A DNA stretch of 64,000 nucleotides, from contig NW_027361724.1 of NCBI RefSeq assembly GCF_039654945.1, positions 13,454,001-13,518,000 of the forward strand, read 5' to 3'. The DNA comes from Dendrobates tinctorius (taxonomy: Eukaryota). The notes under the pieces were generated by a model. It searched no databases and had not been told where the DNA came from. It saw only the letters and a list, made by a program, of their open reading frames with translations. A program made the translations under genes and the position numbers. Shown piece after piece: positions 8,201-58,522 of this stretch (positions are counted from its first letter, which is position 1; each line of letters begins with the position of its first letter).

Positions 8201-8535
8201 TGATCTCTGTGGATCACACACGGATGCTGAGCCTGCTCTCCGGTGACACAGGAGTGTGATCACACATTACATGGGAATGTCCGCACAGATTTCTTCCTGC
8301 AATCATGGAGGATTTCCTCCTCCTCCTCCCTACAGCTGGGATCCCTCATCCTGCACCGCCCTGTCCTCCTCATCACCCCCCATACCTCAGTACAGGGCTC
8401 CTCACCCCCATCCTCCTCGCACCGGCCATCGCCCCCGGCTCTGTGTCCGGACCCCGGTCTCCGGCCCTGGCACAGCCCGGTGTGTGTGGAGCCGCAGGCC
8501 GCACGTACCGCCCGCACTCCGCCTCCTCCCTTTAC

Positions 8536-8643
8536 CTTCTTGATGTTGTAGAGCCGGGTGAGCATGCCGATGCCCCGGTCATTGAGGATGGTCAGCTTCT
8601 CGGCCAGCTTCTGCTGACTGGGCTGCAGCACGGAGCGCGACAT
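8536..8643 (-). CDS. NCKAP1: Nck-associated protein 1, coding exon 1 (gene continues left of the window)
   Basis: [36 protein letters not shown] matches the NCKAP1 N-terminus. A phase-0 donor AAG|GTAAAG follows at 8535. Synteny with DUSP19 and NUP35 agrees. Confidence 0.97.
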
Positions 8644-8990
8644 GCTGCCTCTGTCCTCCTAGCACCGGAGCTGTCCCAGGCCTCGCACGGAGGGAGAAGC
8701 GGCGTTGTCGTTCTTCAGGGCCGGTAGGCGGGGGGCTGTTGTTATGGAGGGGGGACCCTCATACACATCCCATGCCCCGCAGGTTAACGCGATGACACGC
8801 CTGCCTGGCAGCCGCCGTCCAGCACCACCCTTCCTGCCGAATGTGGGCGGCGCCATCCAGAGCCACGCCCCTGTTCCAATCGCCCATGGAGAAGGAATCG
8901 GGATCCCGCGCATGCGCGTCTCTGCGACCGAGTCTGCGGCTGTGGAGTAGTCACAGTGCCCGCGGATGGCGGTGGGGACTGTGCGTACTG
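8644..8990 (-). promoter_or_regulatory. NCKAP1 5' UTR / CpG-island promoter
   Basis: GC/CpG-rich; NRF1 palindrome GCGCATGCGC at 8908-8917; CCAAT at 8876-8880. Confidence 0.65.
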
Positions 8991-45351: not shown

Positions 45352-46917
45352 AAAGTCTGTGTATTTAAATGGCTAAATTCCCATCCTGTACATGCGGTGG
45401 AGAACGGTGACTCTATTCACGTCTTGCATGTGGCCACCAGGTGTCCTTCTTGTAATGTGAGGAATATCTCTTTATTTATTAGTCTTGTCTGATAGTGACT
45501 GCAAGCTTAGGTCCTAAAGAAATGTGGCCATTTCCTCACAGCGGCACATGCTGGATGGAAAGTTTTCAGCAGATTACTTCATGTATTTTGTGCTAACATT
45601 TCAATGTTGCACTTTAAACCACGCCATCTCCCATGTAAAGCCCTCCCTTAAGCAAAGCAAAAATGTGATGCACTGTATGTACGACCTCTTATGATGTGGC
45701 ACTTGGTACAACTTACACTTGCTCTGTAAATCTTTTTCTTAGGTAAACAGACTAAGGCTGTGTGCACACGCTGTGGATTTTGCTGCGGTTCCGCAGCGGT
45801 TTTGGCCACTGCGGACCCGCAGCAGTTTCTGCTGCGGTGTACAGTACAATGATTCCCTATGGGAATCAAAAACCGCAGTGCAGACGGTGCGGAATTTTCC
45901 GCGCGGATTATCTGCGGTTTTCAATCCGCAGAAAGAATTGACATGTCAATTCTTTCTGCGGATTCTCCTGCGGTTTGCCATCTCCTCCATTGAGGAGATG
46001 AAAAACCGCAGGGCAAAACCGCAGAGCAATCCGCAGGTAAAACCGCAGGTCTTTTGACCTGAGAAAACAGAAAGCAAAAAACACAAATATCCTGAACTAA
46101 AAGTAAAAAATATACTGCAAATAATGCATAAAGGTAATAATAAGGGTATTTAGTAAACATAATTTTGATCAAAATAATGTACAAGCCATCCCGCCACGGC
46201 AACCCTTGTGGGACAGTCCCTACTCTAGTATTTAAAACCTTATCACTTGCCAAGTGGCGTGAATGTGAATAAGGGTCGAGCGGCTGAACCACTTGTAACA
46301 GCTTAGGCCAGACTGGATGGCTTTCCCAGCTCAGAAAAAGGGTGGTCACACCCCTATATGCACTGAATGCACAATGAAATGAATAAAAAACAAATCTGAA
46401 CTGAGACAAGTAAGTTAATGTGTATGCACAATGTAAGTGCATTTTAACACATGACCATTAACCAGAGAAAACAGAAAGCAAAAAGATGGATTTTTGGTTC
46501 TTACCATAAAATCTCTTTCTTGGAGCCTTCATTGGGGGACAGAGATTACCATGGGTGTATGCTGCTGCTGCTAGGAGGCTGACACTATGCAAAAAACAAG
46601 AAAATTGACTCCTCCCCGGCAGTATACACCCACCGACAGATACCAAGTACCTCAGTTGGTGAGAAAGCAGTAGGAGAAGCAACGGAACTATAACATATGT
46701 ACCAACCCAACAAGGGACTCAAGGACCCAACACGGTACAACTTAAACAGGGAGGGTGCTGTGTCCCCCAATGAAGGCTCCAAGAAAGAGATTTTACGGTA
46801 AGAACCAAAAATCCATCTTTCTTTATCGCCTTATTGGGGGACACAGATTACCATGGGACGTTCCAAAGCAGTCCCAAGGGCGGGAACAGCAATAAGGAAC
46901 GAAAGAACAGGAAGGGC

Positions 46918-47940
46918 TTAGGTCGGCCAATGCGCCACCGCCGCCTGCAGGACCTTCCTACCACCGACTGCATCAGACGAAGCCTGGGTATGAACCCTGT
47001 AGAACTTCGCGAACGTATGCAAGAACGACCAGGTCGCGGCCCTGCAAATTTGCAGATCCGAAGCCTGGTGTCGAACGACCCACGAAGCTGCCACCGCCCG
47101 GGTGGAGTGAGTTCTCACTCCCGGAGGCGGCCGTTTTTCCTGAAGACGGTATGCTTCCAGAATAGTAGAACGAATCCAGCGAGCGATCGTGGATTTGGAT
47201 GCCGGAAGCCCTTTCCGGTGACCAGAGATGACCAGCAATGAATCGGATTGACGAAGTGAAGCAGTCCTAGCGAGATAAACACGCAAGGCTCTAACAACGT
47301 CCAGTTTGAGGAGTGACTTCTCAAGAGGGTGAGAAGGAACAGGACAAAATGATGGAAGAACGATATCCTCGTTGATGTGGAAGGAGGATACCACCTTTGG
47401 GAGAAAAGAAGGAACGGGCCTGAGGACGACTTTATCCTGATGGAGTACCAGCTAAGGAGAACGACATGACAGGGCCGCTAATTCAGAAACTCTTCTGATG
47501 GATGTTATGGCAATCAGAAAGGTTACCTTCCATGAAAGAAAAGACAAAGGGATGTCCTGGATGGGCTCAAACGGCGCTTTTTTGGAGAGCGCTAAGAACG
47601 AGATTGAGATCCCACGGTTCTATCGGTGAATGATGAGGAGGGGCCACATGAGCGACTCCTTGGAGAAATGTCTTAACCTGCGGTAAAGAAGCGATCTTCC
47701 TTTGAAAAAGGATAAACAAAGCGGAAACCTGGCCCTTGAGGGTACTGAGAGACAGACTCGAATCTAAGCTAGGCTGGAGAAACCCAGAATGGACGGAATG
47801 GAAAAGGACATTGGAAAGACTCTTTTATCGTCGCACCAACGGAAAAAGGCCTTCCAATGCCTATGGTAGATGCGGGAAGAGGCTGGTTTCCTGGCTTTGA
47901 CCATCGTCTGAATCATCTGGTTGGAAAAAACCTGATTCTC
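46918..47940 (-). pseudogene. DIRS tyrosine recombinase (interrupted)
   Basis: LDVVRAL, IARWIR and HSTRAVAASW...TFAKFYR catalytic motifs in ORF 46918-47394; the upstream part has an in-frame stop and frameshifts. Confidence 0.88.
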
Positions 47941-49830
47941 TTAAGGTTGCGGCCTCAACGGCCATGCCGTTAAATTCAGAGACCGAGAAGTCTCGTGGTA
48001 AAGGGGGCCTTGTGAGAAAAGATCCGGACGGTCTGGAAGCCTCCAGGGGACGTCCGCGAGCATGTTCACCAGTTCCGCATACCAAGGCCTTCTTGGCCAG
48101 TCTGGAGCCACAAGAAACACTGGCACGCCTTCCGATTTTATCTTCTTGACCACTCTTGGGATCAAGGCAAGAGGTGGAAACAGATAAGGGAGTTGGAACT
48201 GGGACCACGGAATTACTAGGGCGTCGCAAGCGACGGTTAGAGGGTCCCTGGACCTGGCTACGAAACGCGGAACCTTGTGGCTCATCCGAGATGCCATGAG
48301 GTCGACATCCGGATAACCCCAGCACTGGCATATCTGATAGAAGACTGTGGAATGGAGAGACCATTCGCCTGGCGCTAGGCTTTGGCGACTCAGAAAGTCG
48401 GCTGCCCAGTTTTCCACCCCTGGAATGTGAACAGCGGAGATTGCTGGAACATACTGTTCTGCCCAGCGCAGTATCTTGGCCACTTCTGACATCACTTGGT
48501 TGCTGCGCGTGCCGCCATGATGGTTTATGTACTCCACAGCCATGGCGTTGTCCGACTGAATGCGAACCGGCTTGCTGACGAGAAGAGGTTGCCAGCAAAG
48601 AAGGGCCAGGAAGATTGTTCTGATTTCGAGAAGATTGATAGGGAGCAGAGCTTCCTGTGGATTCCAGCGTCCTTGGGCCGTTCTCTGATGGAAAACCGCT
48701 CCCCAACCTACCTAGGCTGGCATCGGTGGTAATGCCTTGCCACTGGAGCGGGAGGAAGGACCTCCCCTGGAGGACTGACGTAGGCATTGCCCACCAAGTC
48801 AGGGAATGCCTCACTCTGAGAGGGAGGAAAATGGGGCGGTCTAAAGACAACGTCGTCTTGTCCCAAGCTGAGAGGAGGGACAGCTGAAGGGGGCGAAGAT
48901 GAAACTGTGCAAAAGGCACTGCCTCCATGGAAGCCACCATCTTCCCCAGAACTTTCATGCAGAGCCGAAGGGGAATGGGCTTCGGCCGTTTGAGAGCTCG
49001 AATTTCTTTGGACAGAGACGCAAATTTTTCCCCTCGGAAGAAACACCCGGGCCAGATTCGTGTCGAATTCCATGCCTAGGAAGGTCAGACGCTGAGTGGG
49101 TCTGAGAATGGACTTTTCTTTGTTGACTAACCATCCGAGACGGCCGAGGGTATCCAGGGTTATGTGAAGACTCAGGAGACAGTCTTGACGGGACGAGCCT
49201 TTGAACAAGAGATCGTCCAGATAAGGGATGATGAGAATCCCCCTGGATCGAAGGATGGCCATGACCGTCACCATCACCTTCGTGAAAACACGGGGAGCAG
49301 AGGCTAGGCCGTGAATTGATAGTGATTTCCCTGAATCGCAAACCGAAGATATTTCTGATGTTGCAAACAAACAGGGATGTGAAGTTAAGCATCCCGTATG
49401 TTCACAGAGCAGAGGAATTCTCCGGGTTCCATTGAGGCTATCACTGATCGAAGAGACTCCATTTTGAAGTGGAGAATCTTCACATGGCGATTGAGCAACT
49501 TGAGGACCAGGATTGGTCGAAGGGTCCCGTCTTCTTTCAGGACTACAAAAAAATTTGAGTAGAACCCTGAAAACCGTTCGTCTGAGGGAACGGGGACAAT
49601 CACACCGGCGGAAAGAAGGGAGGAGACGGCTTGAAAGAAACCTGGAACGTGGGACCGCTGTCTTGGGGGTCGAGACAGGAAAAAACGTCTGTTTGGCTGG
49701 GAAGCAAATTCGATCTTGTATCCGTATGCGATGATTTCCCTGACCCAAGCATCGTCGACAACAGACAGCCAAGCGTCCGCAAAAAAGGAAAGTCTGCCTC
49801 CCACCCTGGAAAAACTTCCAGGTGGGGGTG
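47941..49830 (-). pseudogene. DIRS reverse transcriptase / RNase H / methyltransferase-like ORF (frameshifted)
   Basis: VGGRL, FYSNFFVV, HFKMESL, SAPRVFTK, PYLDDLL, TTDAS, HIPGVENWAADFLSR, DLMAS and YLFPP motifs are spread over several frames. Confidence 0.9.
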
Positions 49831-49849
49831 ACCCGTCACTTGGAGGAGA

Positions 49850-51234
49850 ACCTTGCTGGGTAGATTTTTCTGTGGACGAGAAGGCAGGAAAGGGCCTAAA
49901 CTGCCGGAAACCCTTTCTGTTAAAAAAGCGTTTTGGCCGAGACTGAGGGAGAGAAGTGCTCTTACCACCAGTGGCATCCAAAATTATTTGATCTAGCTTG
50001 GCTCCAAAGAGCCGAGAACCAAGGAAAGGCAGATTGGTAAGCGACTTTTTAGAGGTGGTATCTGCATTCCATGACCTTAGCCAAAGGACTCGGCGTATGG
50101 CTATTATGTTGCTGTTAGCCCTTGCTACGCACCCAGCCGCATCCAAAGAGGCGGCTAAGAGGTATTTACCCGCATGATTAATTTGAACCGCTAGATCTGC
50201 CAGCTCGTCCTGGAGAGCTGCCGCTAAGATGCCTCTGCGAAGAGTTTTTGCCCAAGCTGAAATGACTTTTGCCACCCAGGAGGAAGCGAAAATAGGACAG
50301 AGAGAGGCACCGGATGCCTCAAAAATGGACTTAGCCAGAGATTCTATCTGCCTGCCTGTTGGATCCTTAAGCGATGCCCTGTCCGGAAGGGATAGAACCG
50401 TCTTAGAGGCTATACGAGAGACGGGAGGATCCACCTCGGGGGCTTTGGTCCATTTTGTGAGCAGATCTACATCAAAGGGATACAGAACATCTAAGTACCT
50501 GCGGCCTGAAAAGCGTTGATCAGGGTGCTCCCAATGTTTGGTTAGAGTAGTATCGAACTCCTTGTGGTTTGAAAGGGTTCGGGATGGAGGCCTCGCTCGT
50601 TTAAATGGAACAGAACATTCCTGAGGAGGAGGTTCGTCCTGCTTAATTTCCAAGGTTTGGAAGATGGCAGAAAGAAGACTATCGACCATATTCCGCGTTT
50701 TAGATATATTATCTGCTTCTGAACTAGATCCCGATTGGGGATCGTCGTCAGAACTAGGGTCGTCCTCTGAAGACGGAGAAGGACACCTGGGAAAAGCCGA
50801 CGGGCCTAGCGAACTGGAAGACGAGCCAGACAGAACATGCTTCCTAGAAATCCTACTCGGCTTGTCCCTCTGAAGGTCGCGGTCAGGTGCGGATGACTCA
50901 CCCTGAGAGGCGGTCGGTGCACAGGTGGCTGTAGATAACTGAGGGGGTCGTCCTCCTAACGTTCTAGGACCTGGACCAGGGACTGAGAGACTTTAGTCAG
51001 ATCGAAGACCGACTGGGACATTGCAACGGCCCACTATGGGAGAGGGGAAGTGCCCTCATCCCGGGAATCGGTGTGCTCCTGAGAGGCCGACATAGCTGAA
51101 GGGCTGCAGGACAGGCAGAGGGGAGACGACTGACCTGACGCCCACTTCCTTTTACAGCGTGCACAAGCGTAGTGGATAACGGTGGGCTTGAAAGATAGCG
51201 CCGTTGAAGGGTTAAACATAGGTATGTTGAGCAC
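49850..51234 (-). pseudogene. DIRS gag-like ORF1 (frameshifted)
   Basis: N-terminal CxxC...CxxC segment (51034-51234), then PEVDPPVSRI, RRVLWLRSW, LPFLGSRLFG motifs typical of vertebrate DIRS ORF1. Confidence 0.8.
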
Positions 51235-52511
51235 TATGGCTGCACTAAAGGCTGCACTAAATAGTAGGGCTGCAGAGGAGAGACAATTTTTCCATTAAGC
51301 GCCGAGCCTACCGAAGTTCTGACGAGCTGGACCCTGACGTGTCCCCCAAGCAGCGCAGGAAGCCAGTGAAATTGCAGAAGGAAGCTGGCTGTGATCTCAG
51401 TGGGCGGTACGTGGCGTCGTGGCGACTAGGCAATGGCAGAGGAGGGGCGCGGTAAAAATGGAGATTGACATCCTTAAAAAGAAAGTAGCGCTGTGATTGG
51501 TGTGAAATGGGCGTGAGAAAAAAGCGCGCACAGAGTGGAAATTCACACCCAGAGAAAAGGGAGCGCGCTCAGAACAGGGAGGAGGGAGCGTGCTGAAAGT
51601 GAAACCGTGTCTCCCTCCCCGCCGAGCTCTTATACTGATGCCCGCGGCGCCGATAATAAAAGGTGAGCCTGCGTTGAACCACTGCTTACAAGGACCGTCC
51701 TAGTAGACCTTGTGTGCCTCTTTCCCTGATCCTAGTATAACCAGAGCGCGGCTGCGATGTGAGGCGCGCGGCTGCAGTGGGGGAGTAGAGGTGGGAAATT
51801 CAAAGTTTGAAACCACTGCTTGTGAAAACATACGGGGCTAAAGGGAACGTTCGGATCTTACCTGACGTCCCTGAAGAGGATGACCGCAGGGGCATGTATA
51901 GCAGACAGGCCGCTGGGAGAGGTCCTCTTACCCGTGTCACGTAGAAGACGGCGTCCTTTTGTTGGGAGCGATGGCGACTACCGTCTTCCTCTCAGCCCTG
52001 TCCTGGGATAGGGATGAGGAGTTGTTTTGCCAAGGACCGGCCACCTGTCGTCCGCCCATAGCACCGAATGGTGATATGGAAAAAGTCCTGCCTGCGGTAC
52101 TGAGAGTTGCGATGTGGGCGACACCACACTGCTCGCTCAGCCGCATGATATGGGAAAGCAGGGTGAACATTTACCCCCTGTTTCCCGATGTAGAATCTGG
52201 AAAATAAATGGGAAAAGATTAATACACACACAAAACCTAAAAGAAAATGGTTAGATGCGGATCTGGGGAGATCCCGGTCCGCCTCCTACAGACACTAAGC
52301 ACAAACTGAGGTACTTGGTATCTGTCGGTGGGTGTATACTGCCGGGGAGGAGTCAATTTTCTTGTTTTTTGCATAGTGTCAGCCTCCTAGCAGCAGCAGC
52401 ATACACCCATGGTAATCTGTGTCCCCAATAAGGCGATAAAGAAAACACAAATATCCTGAACTAAAAGTAAAAAATATACTGCAAATAATGCATAAAGGTA
52501 ATAATAATAAT

Positions 52512-52589
52512 AAGGGTATTTAGTAAACATAATTTTGATCAAAATAATGTACAAGCCATCCCGCCACGTCACGGCAACCCTTGTGGGAC
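52512..52589 (-). ncRNA. Candidate HDV-like self-cleaving ribozyme (variant fold)
   Basis: Manual fold: P1 GUCCC/GGGAU, P2 AAGGGU/ACCCUU, P3 GCC/GGC with a 7-nt loop GUGACGU, J1/4 GG, AU-rich P4 hairpin, J4/2 CUAA. P1 is short and L3 is non-canonical; untested. Confidence 0.45.
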
Positions 52590-53062
52590 TTTTGACCTGC
52601 GGATTGTACAAAATCCGTGCGGATGAATCCGCACCTAATCCACAGCGTGTGCACACAGCCTAACGGATCATTCAATTGTATAAATTCTGAGCTCTAGAAA
52701 CATAAGGAAAAATAGACACTCTTTGCATGGACTGACTTTCCATCACTACGATGGACCCATTTAACAACTTTGTGCAGCCAGCCAGGGTGTGGGCTTAGGA
52801 GCGGGGCGCTTTGCATCCATTGCAGTTGCTGGCTGTGGAATACAGCTGACCTTTCCTCCAACAGCAGTGACCGGATCTAGCTCTGATTGCTTAACCATTT
52901 AGAAGCCATGCCTATTGTCCTTTCATCTTGTGACATGATCACAAGGTGCCATTACAGATTCGATATCAAATTTTAAATCCCAATCTCTACGAATATAAAA
53001 TGCTATAGTGAAGAAAACAAATTAATGTACTGATATTTTTTTTTCTATCTTTACATGCACAG

Positions 53063-58111: not shown

Positions 58112-58522
58112 CAGGACTGTGGAGTCAGTAAGGCAAACCTCCGACTCCTCAATTTCCCTGGCTACGACTCCACAGCATCGGTCACTACTGAGCATGTACA
58201 TAAAGTGCAGCAGATTCATCTCATCCACGACCCCACAGCACTGGTCATAACAGCATGTATATAAAGTGCAGCACAGATTCATCTCATCTATGACTCCACA
58301 GCACTGGTCACTACTGAGCATGTACATAAAGTGCAGCACAGATTCATCTCCGCTAAAAGCTGAGATCCTTAGATCAGGGGCAGTACAGACACTTGTAGGA
58401 CTTTTCATAACTTTCCCTAATTATTATGAAAACATTTACAGCACATCCTGCATTGTGCTACTGTACCCAATTTATTATATATTTTAGGAGTCAGTCCATC
58501 TTATTCCAACTCCACAGCCCTG
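58112..58522. mobile_element. hAT-type MITE with ~62-bp internal repeats
   Basis: CAGGACTGTGGAGT ... ACTCCACAGCCCTG TIRs; perfect 8-bp TSD GTTTTGCA. Confidence 0.88.

What the first reader, a model, noticed from the sequence alone, without database searches (positions are those of the whole stretch)
52512..52589. HDV-like double-pseudoknot fold starting exactly at the 5' end of the tandem insert
Seen on the minus strand, in HDV order: P1 GUCCC (52589-85), AC, P2 AAGGGU (52582-77), U, P3 GCC, 7-nt L3 GUGACGU, P3' GGC, P1' GGGAU (G1-U wobble), GG, an AU-rich P4 hairpin (ACAUUAUUUUG-AU-CAAAAUUAUGU), J4/2 CUAA (candidate catalytic C at 52523), AU, P2' ACCCUU; 78 nt in total. Established: HDV-like ribozymes cut 5' of a G1-U pair, use a C(G/U)AA strand, and process the 5' ends of R2, RTE and L1Tc retrotransposons. 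Deviations: P1 is 5 bp rather than about 7, and L3 begins GUG rather than UCC, so P1.1 and the U-G reverse wobble are non-canonical. It may be a variant, a decayed copy or a coincidence.
Basis: partly seen in the sequence, partly recalled or inferred. Interest (0 to 1): 0.9.

Follow-up and report, generated by a model that had tools for sequence, protein, structure and literature searches.

The report
Truncated HDV-like ribozyme in frog retroelement
The flagged 78 bases are a worn, two-base-short copy of a hepatitis-delta-type RNA fold, probably self-cutting, that heads each ~415-base unit of an abundant non-coding jumping repeat of poison-frog-like genomes; related frogs keep the fold by matching base changes, but cutting itself is untested.

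Summary
The stretch begins at the first base of a TSD-flanked insert (46061-52589, minus strand) holding 1.38 copies of a ~415-nt non-coding unit, later split by a DIRS-like retrotransposon.

The register needs correcting. In the internal unit junction and in relatives, P1 starts 2 nt upstream and has 7 bp (C1-G36). L3 G22 pairs with C37, a P1.1 pair of swapped orientation. J4/2 reads C69-UAA. L1Tc ribozymes of trypanosomes also cut 5' of a C1.

Neither window copy is intact. The flagged copy lacks nt 1-2 of P1, and the internal copy lacks 5 nt of L3.

I fetched eight distinct copies: this window, Dendrobates tinctorius and Ranitomeya imitator. P1, P2, P3, P1.1 and P4 are kept through changes on both sides (75.9% of cells paired against 37-50% with slid partners). 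A structural descriptor gave 0 hits in 10 Mb of random sequence.

No Rfam HDV model matches, position 20 of L3 is G rather than U here, and cleavage is untested.

Verdict: a relic of a probably genuine, L1Tc-like HDV-type ribozyme in a retrozyme-like frog element. The scan has noted this motif before on other DNA of this genome.

The parts
52512..52589 (-). Flagged copy: nt 3-80 of the HDV-like fold (C1 numbering). P1 5' strand 52589-52585, P2 52582-52577 with 52517-52512, P3 52575-52573 with 52565-52563, L3 52572-52566. P1' is 52562-52556. G22 (52570) pairs with C37 (52555). P4 is 52553-52524. The candidate catalytic C69 is at 52523, in CUAAAU. Nt 1-2 of P1 are missing; the flank gives AA.
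46142..46216 (-). Internal copy of the same fold at the unit junction. It has the full 7-bp P1 (C1 at 46216), but 5 nt of L3 are deleted (GCC-GU-GGC), so P3/L3 cannot form.
   Evidence: Contigs of four public runs carry the full L3 (CACGT put in after 46194)
46061..52589 (-). TSD-flanked insert of 1.38 units of a ~415-nt non-coding repeat: A1 52589-52442, B 46481-46215, A2 46214-46078, b 46077-46061. A DIRS-like element interrupts it.
52590..52599 (-). Upstream copy of the target-site duplication CAGGTCAAAA.
46052..46061 (-). Downstream copy of the target-site duplication. The first C is ambiguous: it could be the element's last base.
46482..52441 (-). DIRS1-like tyrosine-recombinase retrotransposon inserted later into the unit. 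It has gag/LAP2alpha, RT and a weak integrase match. Inverted terminal repeats lie at 52444-52300 and 46661-46482, and an internal complementary region at 46857-46758. It is not part of the ribozyme.

Best explanation
The stretch is a 5'-truncated relic of an HDV-like self-cleaving ribozyme of the L1Tc-like sort: a C1-G closing pair in P1 and a short P1.1 of swapped orientation. This fold begins each ~415-nt unit of an abundant, non-coding, tandem-unit retroelement of dendrobatid-like frogs.

Inferred mechanism:
- Multimeric transcripts fold into P1-P2-P3-P1.1-P4.
- C69 in J4/2 acts as the general acid and the RNA is cut 5' of C1, giving a 5'-OH end.
- A borrowed reverse transcriptase (Penelope-like or LINE) copies such RNA from a fixed 3' site into a nicked target, making TSD-flanked partial tandems.

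In this insert the cDNA ended 2 nt short of the cut. The upstream copy therefore has a 5-bp P1. The internal copy later lost 5 nt of L3. Neither copy is likely to cut now.

Shown: the fold, its covariation, the insert anatomy and the high copy number. Inferred: cleavage, the cut site and the mobilising enzyme.
For: - Architecture: the family-type sequence (junction CU plus the flagged copy) meets a full descriptor. This asks for a 7-bp P1, P1.1, a 3-bp P3, L3 ..CG., P2 of 5 bp or more, CNAA and P4.
- Independent copies: fetched from D. tinctorius (L001, L004) and R. imitator (L007, L008, L010 x3) by CM and by descriptor.
- Covariation over 8 distinct sequences: P1 is 92.9% paired, with changes on both sides in 5 of 7 pairs. 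Examples are CUGUCCC/GGGAUGG, CCUGGCA/UGCCGGG, CUGCUCU/AGAGCAG and CCCAUCA/UGAUGGG. The outer P3 pair is AU in 4 and GC in 4. P1.1 is GC in 4 and AU in 2.
- Whole structure: 75.9% of cells paired against 37-50% with slid partners; covariation score 0.429 against 0.176 or less.
- P2: it was not in the CM, yet takes three forms, AAGGGU/ACCCUU, GAGAAU/AUUCUC and GAGAC/GUCUC. Matching each 5' strand to its own 3' strand beats all but 24 of 5040 permutations.
- J4/2 keeps C-N-A-A (CUAA, CGAA, CCAA, CAAA).
- Core conservation: against D. tinctorius L001 the core is 30/34 identical and the rest of the unit 151/241, Fisher p 0.0017.
- Insert 5' end: within 2 nt of the predicted cut, about 0.012 by chance.
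- Precedent: L1TcRz cuts 5' of C1 and has a single-pair P1.1 (PMC3185411). Trypanosomatid HDV-like ribozymes differ from HDV and R2 in the orientation of the P1 GC pairs and in P1.1 (PMC4035085).
- Abundance: 4515 contigs of one DNA run fit the unit, and a second species also holds it.
Against: - No Rfam HDV-type model matches the window copies or the relatives, even at E up to 10.
- The canonical G1.U37 wobble is absent in the favoured register.
- L3 position 20 is G here, A in L001, and U only in some copies. Canonical HDV ribozymes need U20 for the U20.G25 reverse wobble.
- One abundant contig of the second species has an A.G mismatch in P3.
- P2 is only 3-4 bp in both D. tinctorius copies.
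- The R. imitator partial tandem (L010 36741-35937) does not start at the ribozyme. The 5'-end coincidence therefore rests on this one insert.
- There are few sequences, they are related, and the alignment was fitted to P1/P3/P4.
- No RNA-end data: only contigs could be laid.
- No cleavage assay exists.
Confidence: 0.68

Rival explanations
1. A conserved structured RNA or DNA element of the repeat that does not cleave. It could be a recognition or priming structure for the mobilising reverse transcriptase, or part of an internal promoter. Its helices would merely share the HDV topology.
For: P1, P3 and P4 covary, which shows structure but not catalysis. L3 position 20 is not the canonical U in this subfamily. 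No Rfam HDV match. Conservation also extends about 28 nt upstream of the predicted cut.
Against: A non-catalytic role does not explain an invariant C-N-A-A strand placed between P4 and P2'. Nor does it explain the covarying single P1.1 pair (GC/AU) or the pseudoknotted P2. It also does not explain an insert end within 2 nt of the predicted cut. The same layout is a proven ribozyme in L1Tc.
Confidence: 0.17
2. One reading: the ribozyme has a 5-bp P1 with a G1.U wobble and cuts directly 5' of G52589, so the insert starts exactly at the cut.
For: The insert does begin at that G. G.U at the cut site is the canonical HDV feature, and GG follows P1' as in HDV.
Against: L3 offers no CC to pair with that GG. 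In 6 of 8 copies the two bases upstream pair with it, C-G and U.G/C-G/U-A, and they covary. With the 7-bp P1, G22-C37 (or A22-U37) becomes P1.1. A 5-bp P1 was not found in the sources read here.
Confidence: 0.08
3. Chance resemblance: an AT-rich hairpin plus a few short complementary runs in the end of a repeat.
For: The MFE is not better than shuffles (z 0.18). Both window copies fail the full descriptor as they stand. The first-stage reader has proposed HDV folds elsewhere that did not hold (note s1-366799).
Against: Null rate is 0 in 10 Mb for the full descriptor. Copies with quite different helix sequences in two other frog genera keep every helix.
Confidence: 0.05

Closest known systems
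L1TcRz / Pr77-type HDV-like ribozymes of trypanosomatid L1Tc, NARTc and SIDER elements
   Same: Both sit at the 5' end of retroelement RNA, non-autonomous elements included. The cut is 5' of a C1 that closes P1 with G. P1.1 is reduced to one pair, and an upstream base that extends P1 competes with it. J4/2 contains CUAA (GCTAAGCG in the published primers). Sources: PMC3185411 and PMC4035085.
   Different: The host is a vertebrate. The carrier is a ~415-nt non-coding unit found in partial tandems and arrays, with no known autonomous partner and no poly(A). Sequence homology to L1Tc was not tested, because I had no full L1Tc sequence from a tool. Activity is not shown here.
HDV / CPEB3 / R2 / RTE HDV-like ribozymes (canonical descriptor: G1.Y37, C-G P1.1, U20...C24 G25, CNRA)
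   Same: Same order and nesting of P1, P2, P3, P1.1 and P4. P3 has 3 bp, L3 has 7 nt with C24 G25, C-N-A-A follows P4, and the whole is about 80 nt (descriptor features from PMC6326823).
   Different: C1-G in place of G1.U. The P1.1 pair is G-C or A-U with the purine in L3. U20 is not conserved. No Rfam model recognises it.
Animal non-LTR retrozymes (tandem, non-coding, Penelope-derived units with type I hammerheads)
   Same: Non-coding units of a few hundred nt, one ribozyme per unit, found as monomers, dimers and arrays, abundant in amphibians (PMC7229834 and bioRxiv 10.64898/2026.07.22.740005). Partial tandems and fold-back arrangements also occur here.
   Different: No hammerhead was found by Rfam in the unit; an HDV-like fold stands in its place. 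CircRNA and a Penelope origin were not tested.

Membership tests
HDV-like self-cleaving ribozymes | Nested double pseudoknot with P1, P2, P3, P1.1 and P4 in the canonical order and with short junctions | tested here: met
   The family-type sequence and R. imitator L008 pass a structural descriptor; null 0 in 10 Mb. The flagged copy alone has only 5 of 7 P1 pairs, and the internal copy lacks L3.
HDV-like self-cleaving ribozymes | Helices supported by covariation | tested here: met
   8 distinct copies from 3 genomes. P1 has 5 of 7 pairs changed on both sides. P3 is AU4/GC4. P1.1 is GC4/AU2. P2 has three helix types. The sample is small and the sequences are related.
HDV-like self-cleaving ribozymes | Catalytic cytosine at the start of J4/2 (C75 equivalent) followed by N-A-A | tested here: met
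   CUAA here and in L001 and L007, CGAA in L008, CCAA and CAAA in L010. The decayed L004 has CUUA.
HDV-like self-cleaving ribozymes | G1.U37 wobble at the cleavage site | tested here: not met
   The first pair is C-G in 6 of 8 copies. The experimentally active L1TcRz also starts with C1, so this feature is not universal.
HDV-like self-cleaving ribozymes | L3 with U20.G25 reverse wobble and C24 | tested here: inconclusive
   G25 is present in all copies. C24 is present in most, but is A in L001 and L010a. Position 20 is G here, A in L001, and U in L004, L007, L008 and L010b.
HDV-like self-cleaving ribozymes | Match to a curated covariance model (Rfam HDV, CPEB3, drz families) | tested here: not met
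   No hit at gathering score or at E up to 10. These models do not encode the pseudoknots.
HDV-like self-cleaving ribozymes | Site-specific self-cleavage giving 5'-OH and 2',3'-cyclic phosphate | not testable with these tools
   Only assembled contigs of public runs could be laid, so no RNA ends are visible.
Retrozymes (ribozyme-bearing non-autonomous retroelements that make circRNA) | Non-coding unit with one self-cleaving ribozyme per unit, in tandem, TSD-flanked | tested here: met
   1.38 units with a 9-10-bp TSD here. 1.84 units of 437 nt in R. imitator L010. No Pfam domain in the unit's ORFs. That the ribozyme cleaves is inferred.
Retrozymes (ribozyme-bearing non-autonomous retroelements that make circRNA) | Hammerhead ribozyme | tested here: not met
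   No hammerhead in the unit at E up to 10.
Retrozymes (ribozyme-bearing non-autonomous retroelements that make circRNA) | Unit-length circular RNA in vivo | not testable with these tools
   No RNA reads available. Unit fold z is -2.2 linear and -1.8 circular, only mildly structured.

The most novel reading that the evidence does not exclude
Dendrobatid frogs carry a true 'HDV-type retrozyme'. Unit-length (~415-437 nt) RNAs would be released by an L1Tc-like HDV ribozyme, circularised by the host ligase, and copied by rolling reverse transcription into partial tandems. That would be a second, independent ribozyme solution to the retrozyme lifestyle, and it would be in vertebrates.
Probability: 0.3. 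Interest if true: 0.8.

Novelty: new variant of a known kind. Interest (0 to 1): 0.62.

Why it matters
HDV-like ribozymes are known at the 5' ends of R2, RTE and L1Tc-type LINEs. Tandem non-coding 'retrozymes' of animals are known only with hammerheads.

A covarying HDV-type fold heading a very abundant tandem non-coding retroelement in frogs would join the two themes. It would extend the little-noticed C1-G variant from trypanosomes to vertebrates. It would also show that standard descriptors and Rfam models miss a whole branch of this ribozyme class.

It gives a concrete set of natural sequences for cleavage assays and for circRNA searches. I found no paper describing it in the searchable library.

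The flagged copy itself is only a worn relic.

Tried and rejected
- Rfam at gathering score and at E up to 10, on both window copies and on two relatives: nothing of the HDV, hammerhead or other ribozyme type.
- Plain MFE of the 78 nt: not better than shuffles. This says little for a pseudoknot.
- Getting family copies through proteins: the translated unit ORF found no homologue, and exact look-ups of two unit ORFs found nothing.
- Exact-pattern scans for the family core in metagenome, viral and prokaryote genome collections: 0 hits each.
- Read laying gave only contigs, so no RNA starts or ends and no linked variants. It did show the high copy number, the full-length L3 as the usual form and a few variants.
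- A weak look-alike at window 25437 (minus strand) lacks P2 and CNAA, and was rejected.
- L007:24270 passes the descriptor only with a P1 mismatch and an AAA/UUU P3, and was rejected as chance.
- My automatic re-parse of P3 picked wrong registers. I replaced it with fixed segments.
- The 5'-end argument is weaker than it looked: the R. imitator partial tandem starts 189 nt upstream of its ribozyme.

Full report
**Observation.** The order is GUCCC, AC, AAGGGU, U, GCC, GUGACGU, GGC, GGGAU, GG, then an AU-rich hairpin, CUAA with its C at 52523, AU, and ACCCUU.

The listing omits CUUGU before the hairpin and UUA before CUAA. The hairpin has a U.U mismatch, and its real loop is GAUC. None of this changes the picture.

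**Context.**
- The 148 nt at 52589-52442 recur at 46214-46078 in the same orientation.
- Between them lies a DIRS1-like tyrosine-recombinase retrotransposon, about 46482-52441. It has gag/LAP2alpha, RT and a weak integrase match.
- It shows the classical DIRS layout. Inverted terminal repeats lie at 52444-52300 and 46661-46482. An internal complementary region at 46857-46758 is complementary to the start of the left repeat and the end of the right one.
- Removing it leaves A1-B-A2-b, which is 1.38 copies of a non-coding unit. With the full L3 and the longer TTA run the unit is 415 nt.
- The insert is bounded by a 9-10-bp duplication, CAGGTCAAAA.
- Contigs of public runs confirm two points. Uninterrupted units run from B straight into A, and the host repeat runs straight across the empty site.

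**Register.** Earlier notes of this scan pointed to a variant with a C1-G pair and a swapped P1.1. I tested this on the sequence.
- At the internal unit junction the fold is preceded by CU (...GGGA|CUGUCCC, C1 at 46216).
- With these two bases P1 has 7 bp: C-G, U.G, G.U, U-A, C-G, C-G, C-G.
The next base, C37, pairs with G22 of L3. P4 can start at U39-A68, directly before C69-UAA.
- The flagged copy has AA from the flank in place of CU, so it keeps 5 of 7 P1 pairs.
- The internal copy has the whole P1 but lacks 5 nt of L3 (GCC-GU-GGC).
- In four public runs, contigs covering this spot carry those 5 nt, either as an insertion or as a clipped end reading ...TCACGGCAACCC. The deletion therefore looks local to this copy.

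**Is it more than chance?** I wrote a structural descriptor and ran it on 10 Mb of first-order Markov sequence with the window's composition.
- The descriptor asks for a 7-bp P1, a 3-bp Watson-Crick P3 and a 7-8-nt L3 ending CG-N. L3 position 3 must pair with the base after P1'. It also asks for P2 of 5 bp or more, C-N-A-A 0-2 nt before P2', and a P4 stem.
- The core matched 27 times and the full fold 0 times.
- The family-type sequence passes. The window as it stands gives no hit on either strand.
- Energetically, P1+P3+P4 (-11.8 kcal/mol) plus the P2 duplex (-6.7) is comparable with the best unknotted fold (-15.0).

**Relatives.**
- Homologues of the DIRS gag showed that the genome is close to poison frogs: Dendrobates tinctorius at 76-82% identity, then Ranitomeya and Anomaloglossus.
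- I used those proteins only as handles to fetch about 260 kb of D. tinctorius, R. imitator and A. baeobatrachus DNA.
- BLAST, a covariance model holding only P1, P3 and P4, and the descriptor found further copies. These are D. tinctorius L001:2528-2617 and L004:16056-15968, and R. imitator L008:8748-8828, L007:5186-5106, L010:36552-36461, L010:36115-36024 and L010:14238-14147.
- L001 is homologous over the whole unit. The ribozyme core is 30/34 identical, against 151/241 for the rest (Fisher p 0.0017). Two of the four core changes turn the P3 pair G-C into A-U.
- The Ranitomeya copies have quite different helices. P1 is CCUGGCA/UGCCGGG, CUGCUCU/AGAGCAG or CCCAUCA/UGAUGGG. P2 is AGAGU/AUUCU, GAGAAU/AUUCUC, GGGUAU/AUACCC or GAGAC/GUCUC. 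P1.1 is A22-U37 plus U21-A38 in L007 and L008. J4/2 is CGAA, CUAA, CCAA or CAAA.

**Pair counts over 8 distinct sequences.**

| Measure | Observed | Control |
|---|---|---|
| Cells paired, whole structure | 75.9% | 37-50% with slid partners |
| Covariation score | 0.429 | 0.176 or less with slid partners |
| Shuffles reaching the observed score | 0 of 500 | - |
| P1 cells paired | 92.9% | - |
| P1 pairs changed on both sides | 5 of 7 | - |

P2 and P1.1 were not in the model, so the fitting does not favour them. Matching each P2 5' strand to its own 3' strand beats all but 24 of 5040 permutations.

Caveats: the sequences are few and related, and the D. tinctorius copies have a weak P2.

**Comparison with the literature.**
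- The canonical descriptor fixes G1.Y37, C-G pairs in P1.1, U20, C24, G25 and a CRRA J4/2 (PMC6326823). This family breaks the first two, and in part the third.
- L1TcRz of Trypanosoma cruzi cuts 5' of C1 and has a single-pair P1.1 that a G at -1 can disrupt by extending P1. It is active in vitro (PMC3185411). Its published primers show GCUAAG in J4/2.
- Its authors later stated that trypanosomatid ribozymes differ from HDV and R2 in the orientation of the P1 GC pairs and in P1.1. They judged the standard descriptor too restrictive (PMC4035085).
- So the frog fold is best filed as an L1Tc-like variant of the HDV-like class.
- No Rfam model sees it.
- Animal non-LTR retrozymes are tandem, non-coding, Penelope-derived and carry hammerheads. 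I found no report of an HDV-type counterpart or of such ribozymes in dendrobatids.

**Mechanism and its weak points.**
- The insert here begins 2 nt inside the predicted product. That is about a 1% coincidence for a 415-nt unit.
- The R. imitator partial tandem (1.84 units of 437 nt, L010 36741-35937) begins 189 nt upstream of its ribozyme. Ribozyme-defined 5' ends are therefore not the rule in my small sample.
- Both inserts do end at the homologous 3' position (...UUUUCUC| here, ...GUGUCUUC| there). This fits reverse transcription primed at a fixed site on a multimeric or circular template.
- Whether the template is a partly processed multimer or a circle cannot be told from DNA.
- In the abundant subfamily of this genome L3 starts with G, not U. 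One common contig of the second species has an A.G mismatch in P3. Many copies may therefore be catalytically poor.

**Verdict.**
- The two copies in this window are relics. One lacks the first two P1 bases, the other lacks 5 nt of L3.
- The underlying family motif is, with about two-thirds confidence, a genuine HDV-like ribozyme of the C1-G type in a retrozyme-like frog element.
- The scan had already noted this motif on other pieces of this genome. Here I re-derived the evidence independently from public frog assemblies.

Noticed in passing
window 46482-52441 (minus strand): A DIRS1-like tyrosine-recombinase retrotransposon with the textbook layout. The left ITR is 52444-52300 and the right ITR 46661-46482. 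The internal complementary region at 46857-46758 is made of the complements of the left ITR start and the right ITR end. ORFs are frameshifted: gag/LAP2alpha 50689-49385, RT 49772-48708, and a weak integrase match at 47394-46918. The closest gag is from Dendrobates tinctorius (76-82%).
   Followed up: partly
window 45900-46060 and 52590-52700: The host of the insert is itself a repeat full of CCGCAGG/CCTGCGG motifs, with a perfect 42-bp palindrome at 45923-45964. It is very high copy in the public runs and looks MITE-like.
   Followed up: no
L010:35937-36741 (R. imitator): A partial tandem of 1.84 units of 437 nt, with the two copies 100% identical. Each full unit carries the HDV-like fold. 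Its 3' end lies at the position homologous to this window's insert 3' end, but its 5' end is not at the ribozyme.
   Followed up: partly
L008:8524-8912 (R. imitator) and L001:2286-2386 (D. tinctorius): The ribozyme-bearing copies sit in fold-back arrangements. L008 has 118-nt inverted arms at 8524-8641 and 8795-8912. L001 has an inverted, decayed partial copy about 150 nt upstream of the direct copy. This resembles Penelope-type inserts that carry an inverted 5' piece.
   Followed up: no
window 46320-46340 versus 46183-46190, and the unit fold: B contains AGCCAUCC, a perfect complement of the P1' strand GGAUGGCU. In the MFE of the whole unit the ribozyme 5' half pairs with the unit's 3' end. 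This could hold the ribozyme inactive in a rod-like RNA, but the complement is not kept in D. tinctorius L001.
   Followed up: partly
window 58162-58350: Three copies of a 63-bp tandem repeat (85% matches).
   Followed up: no
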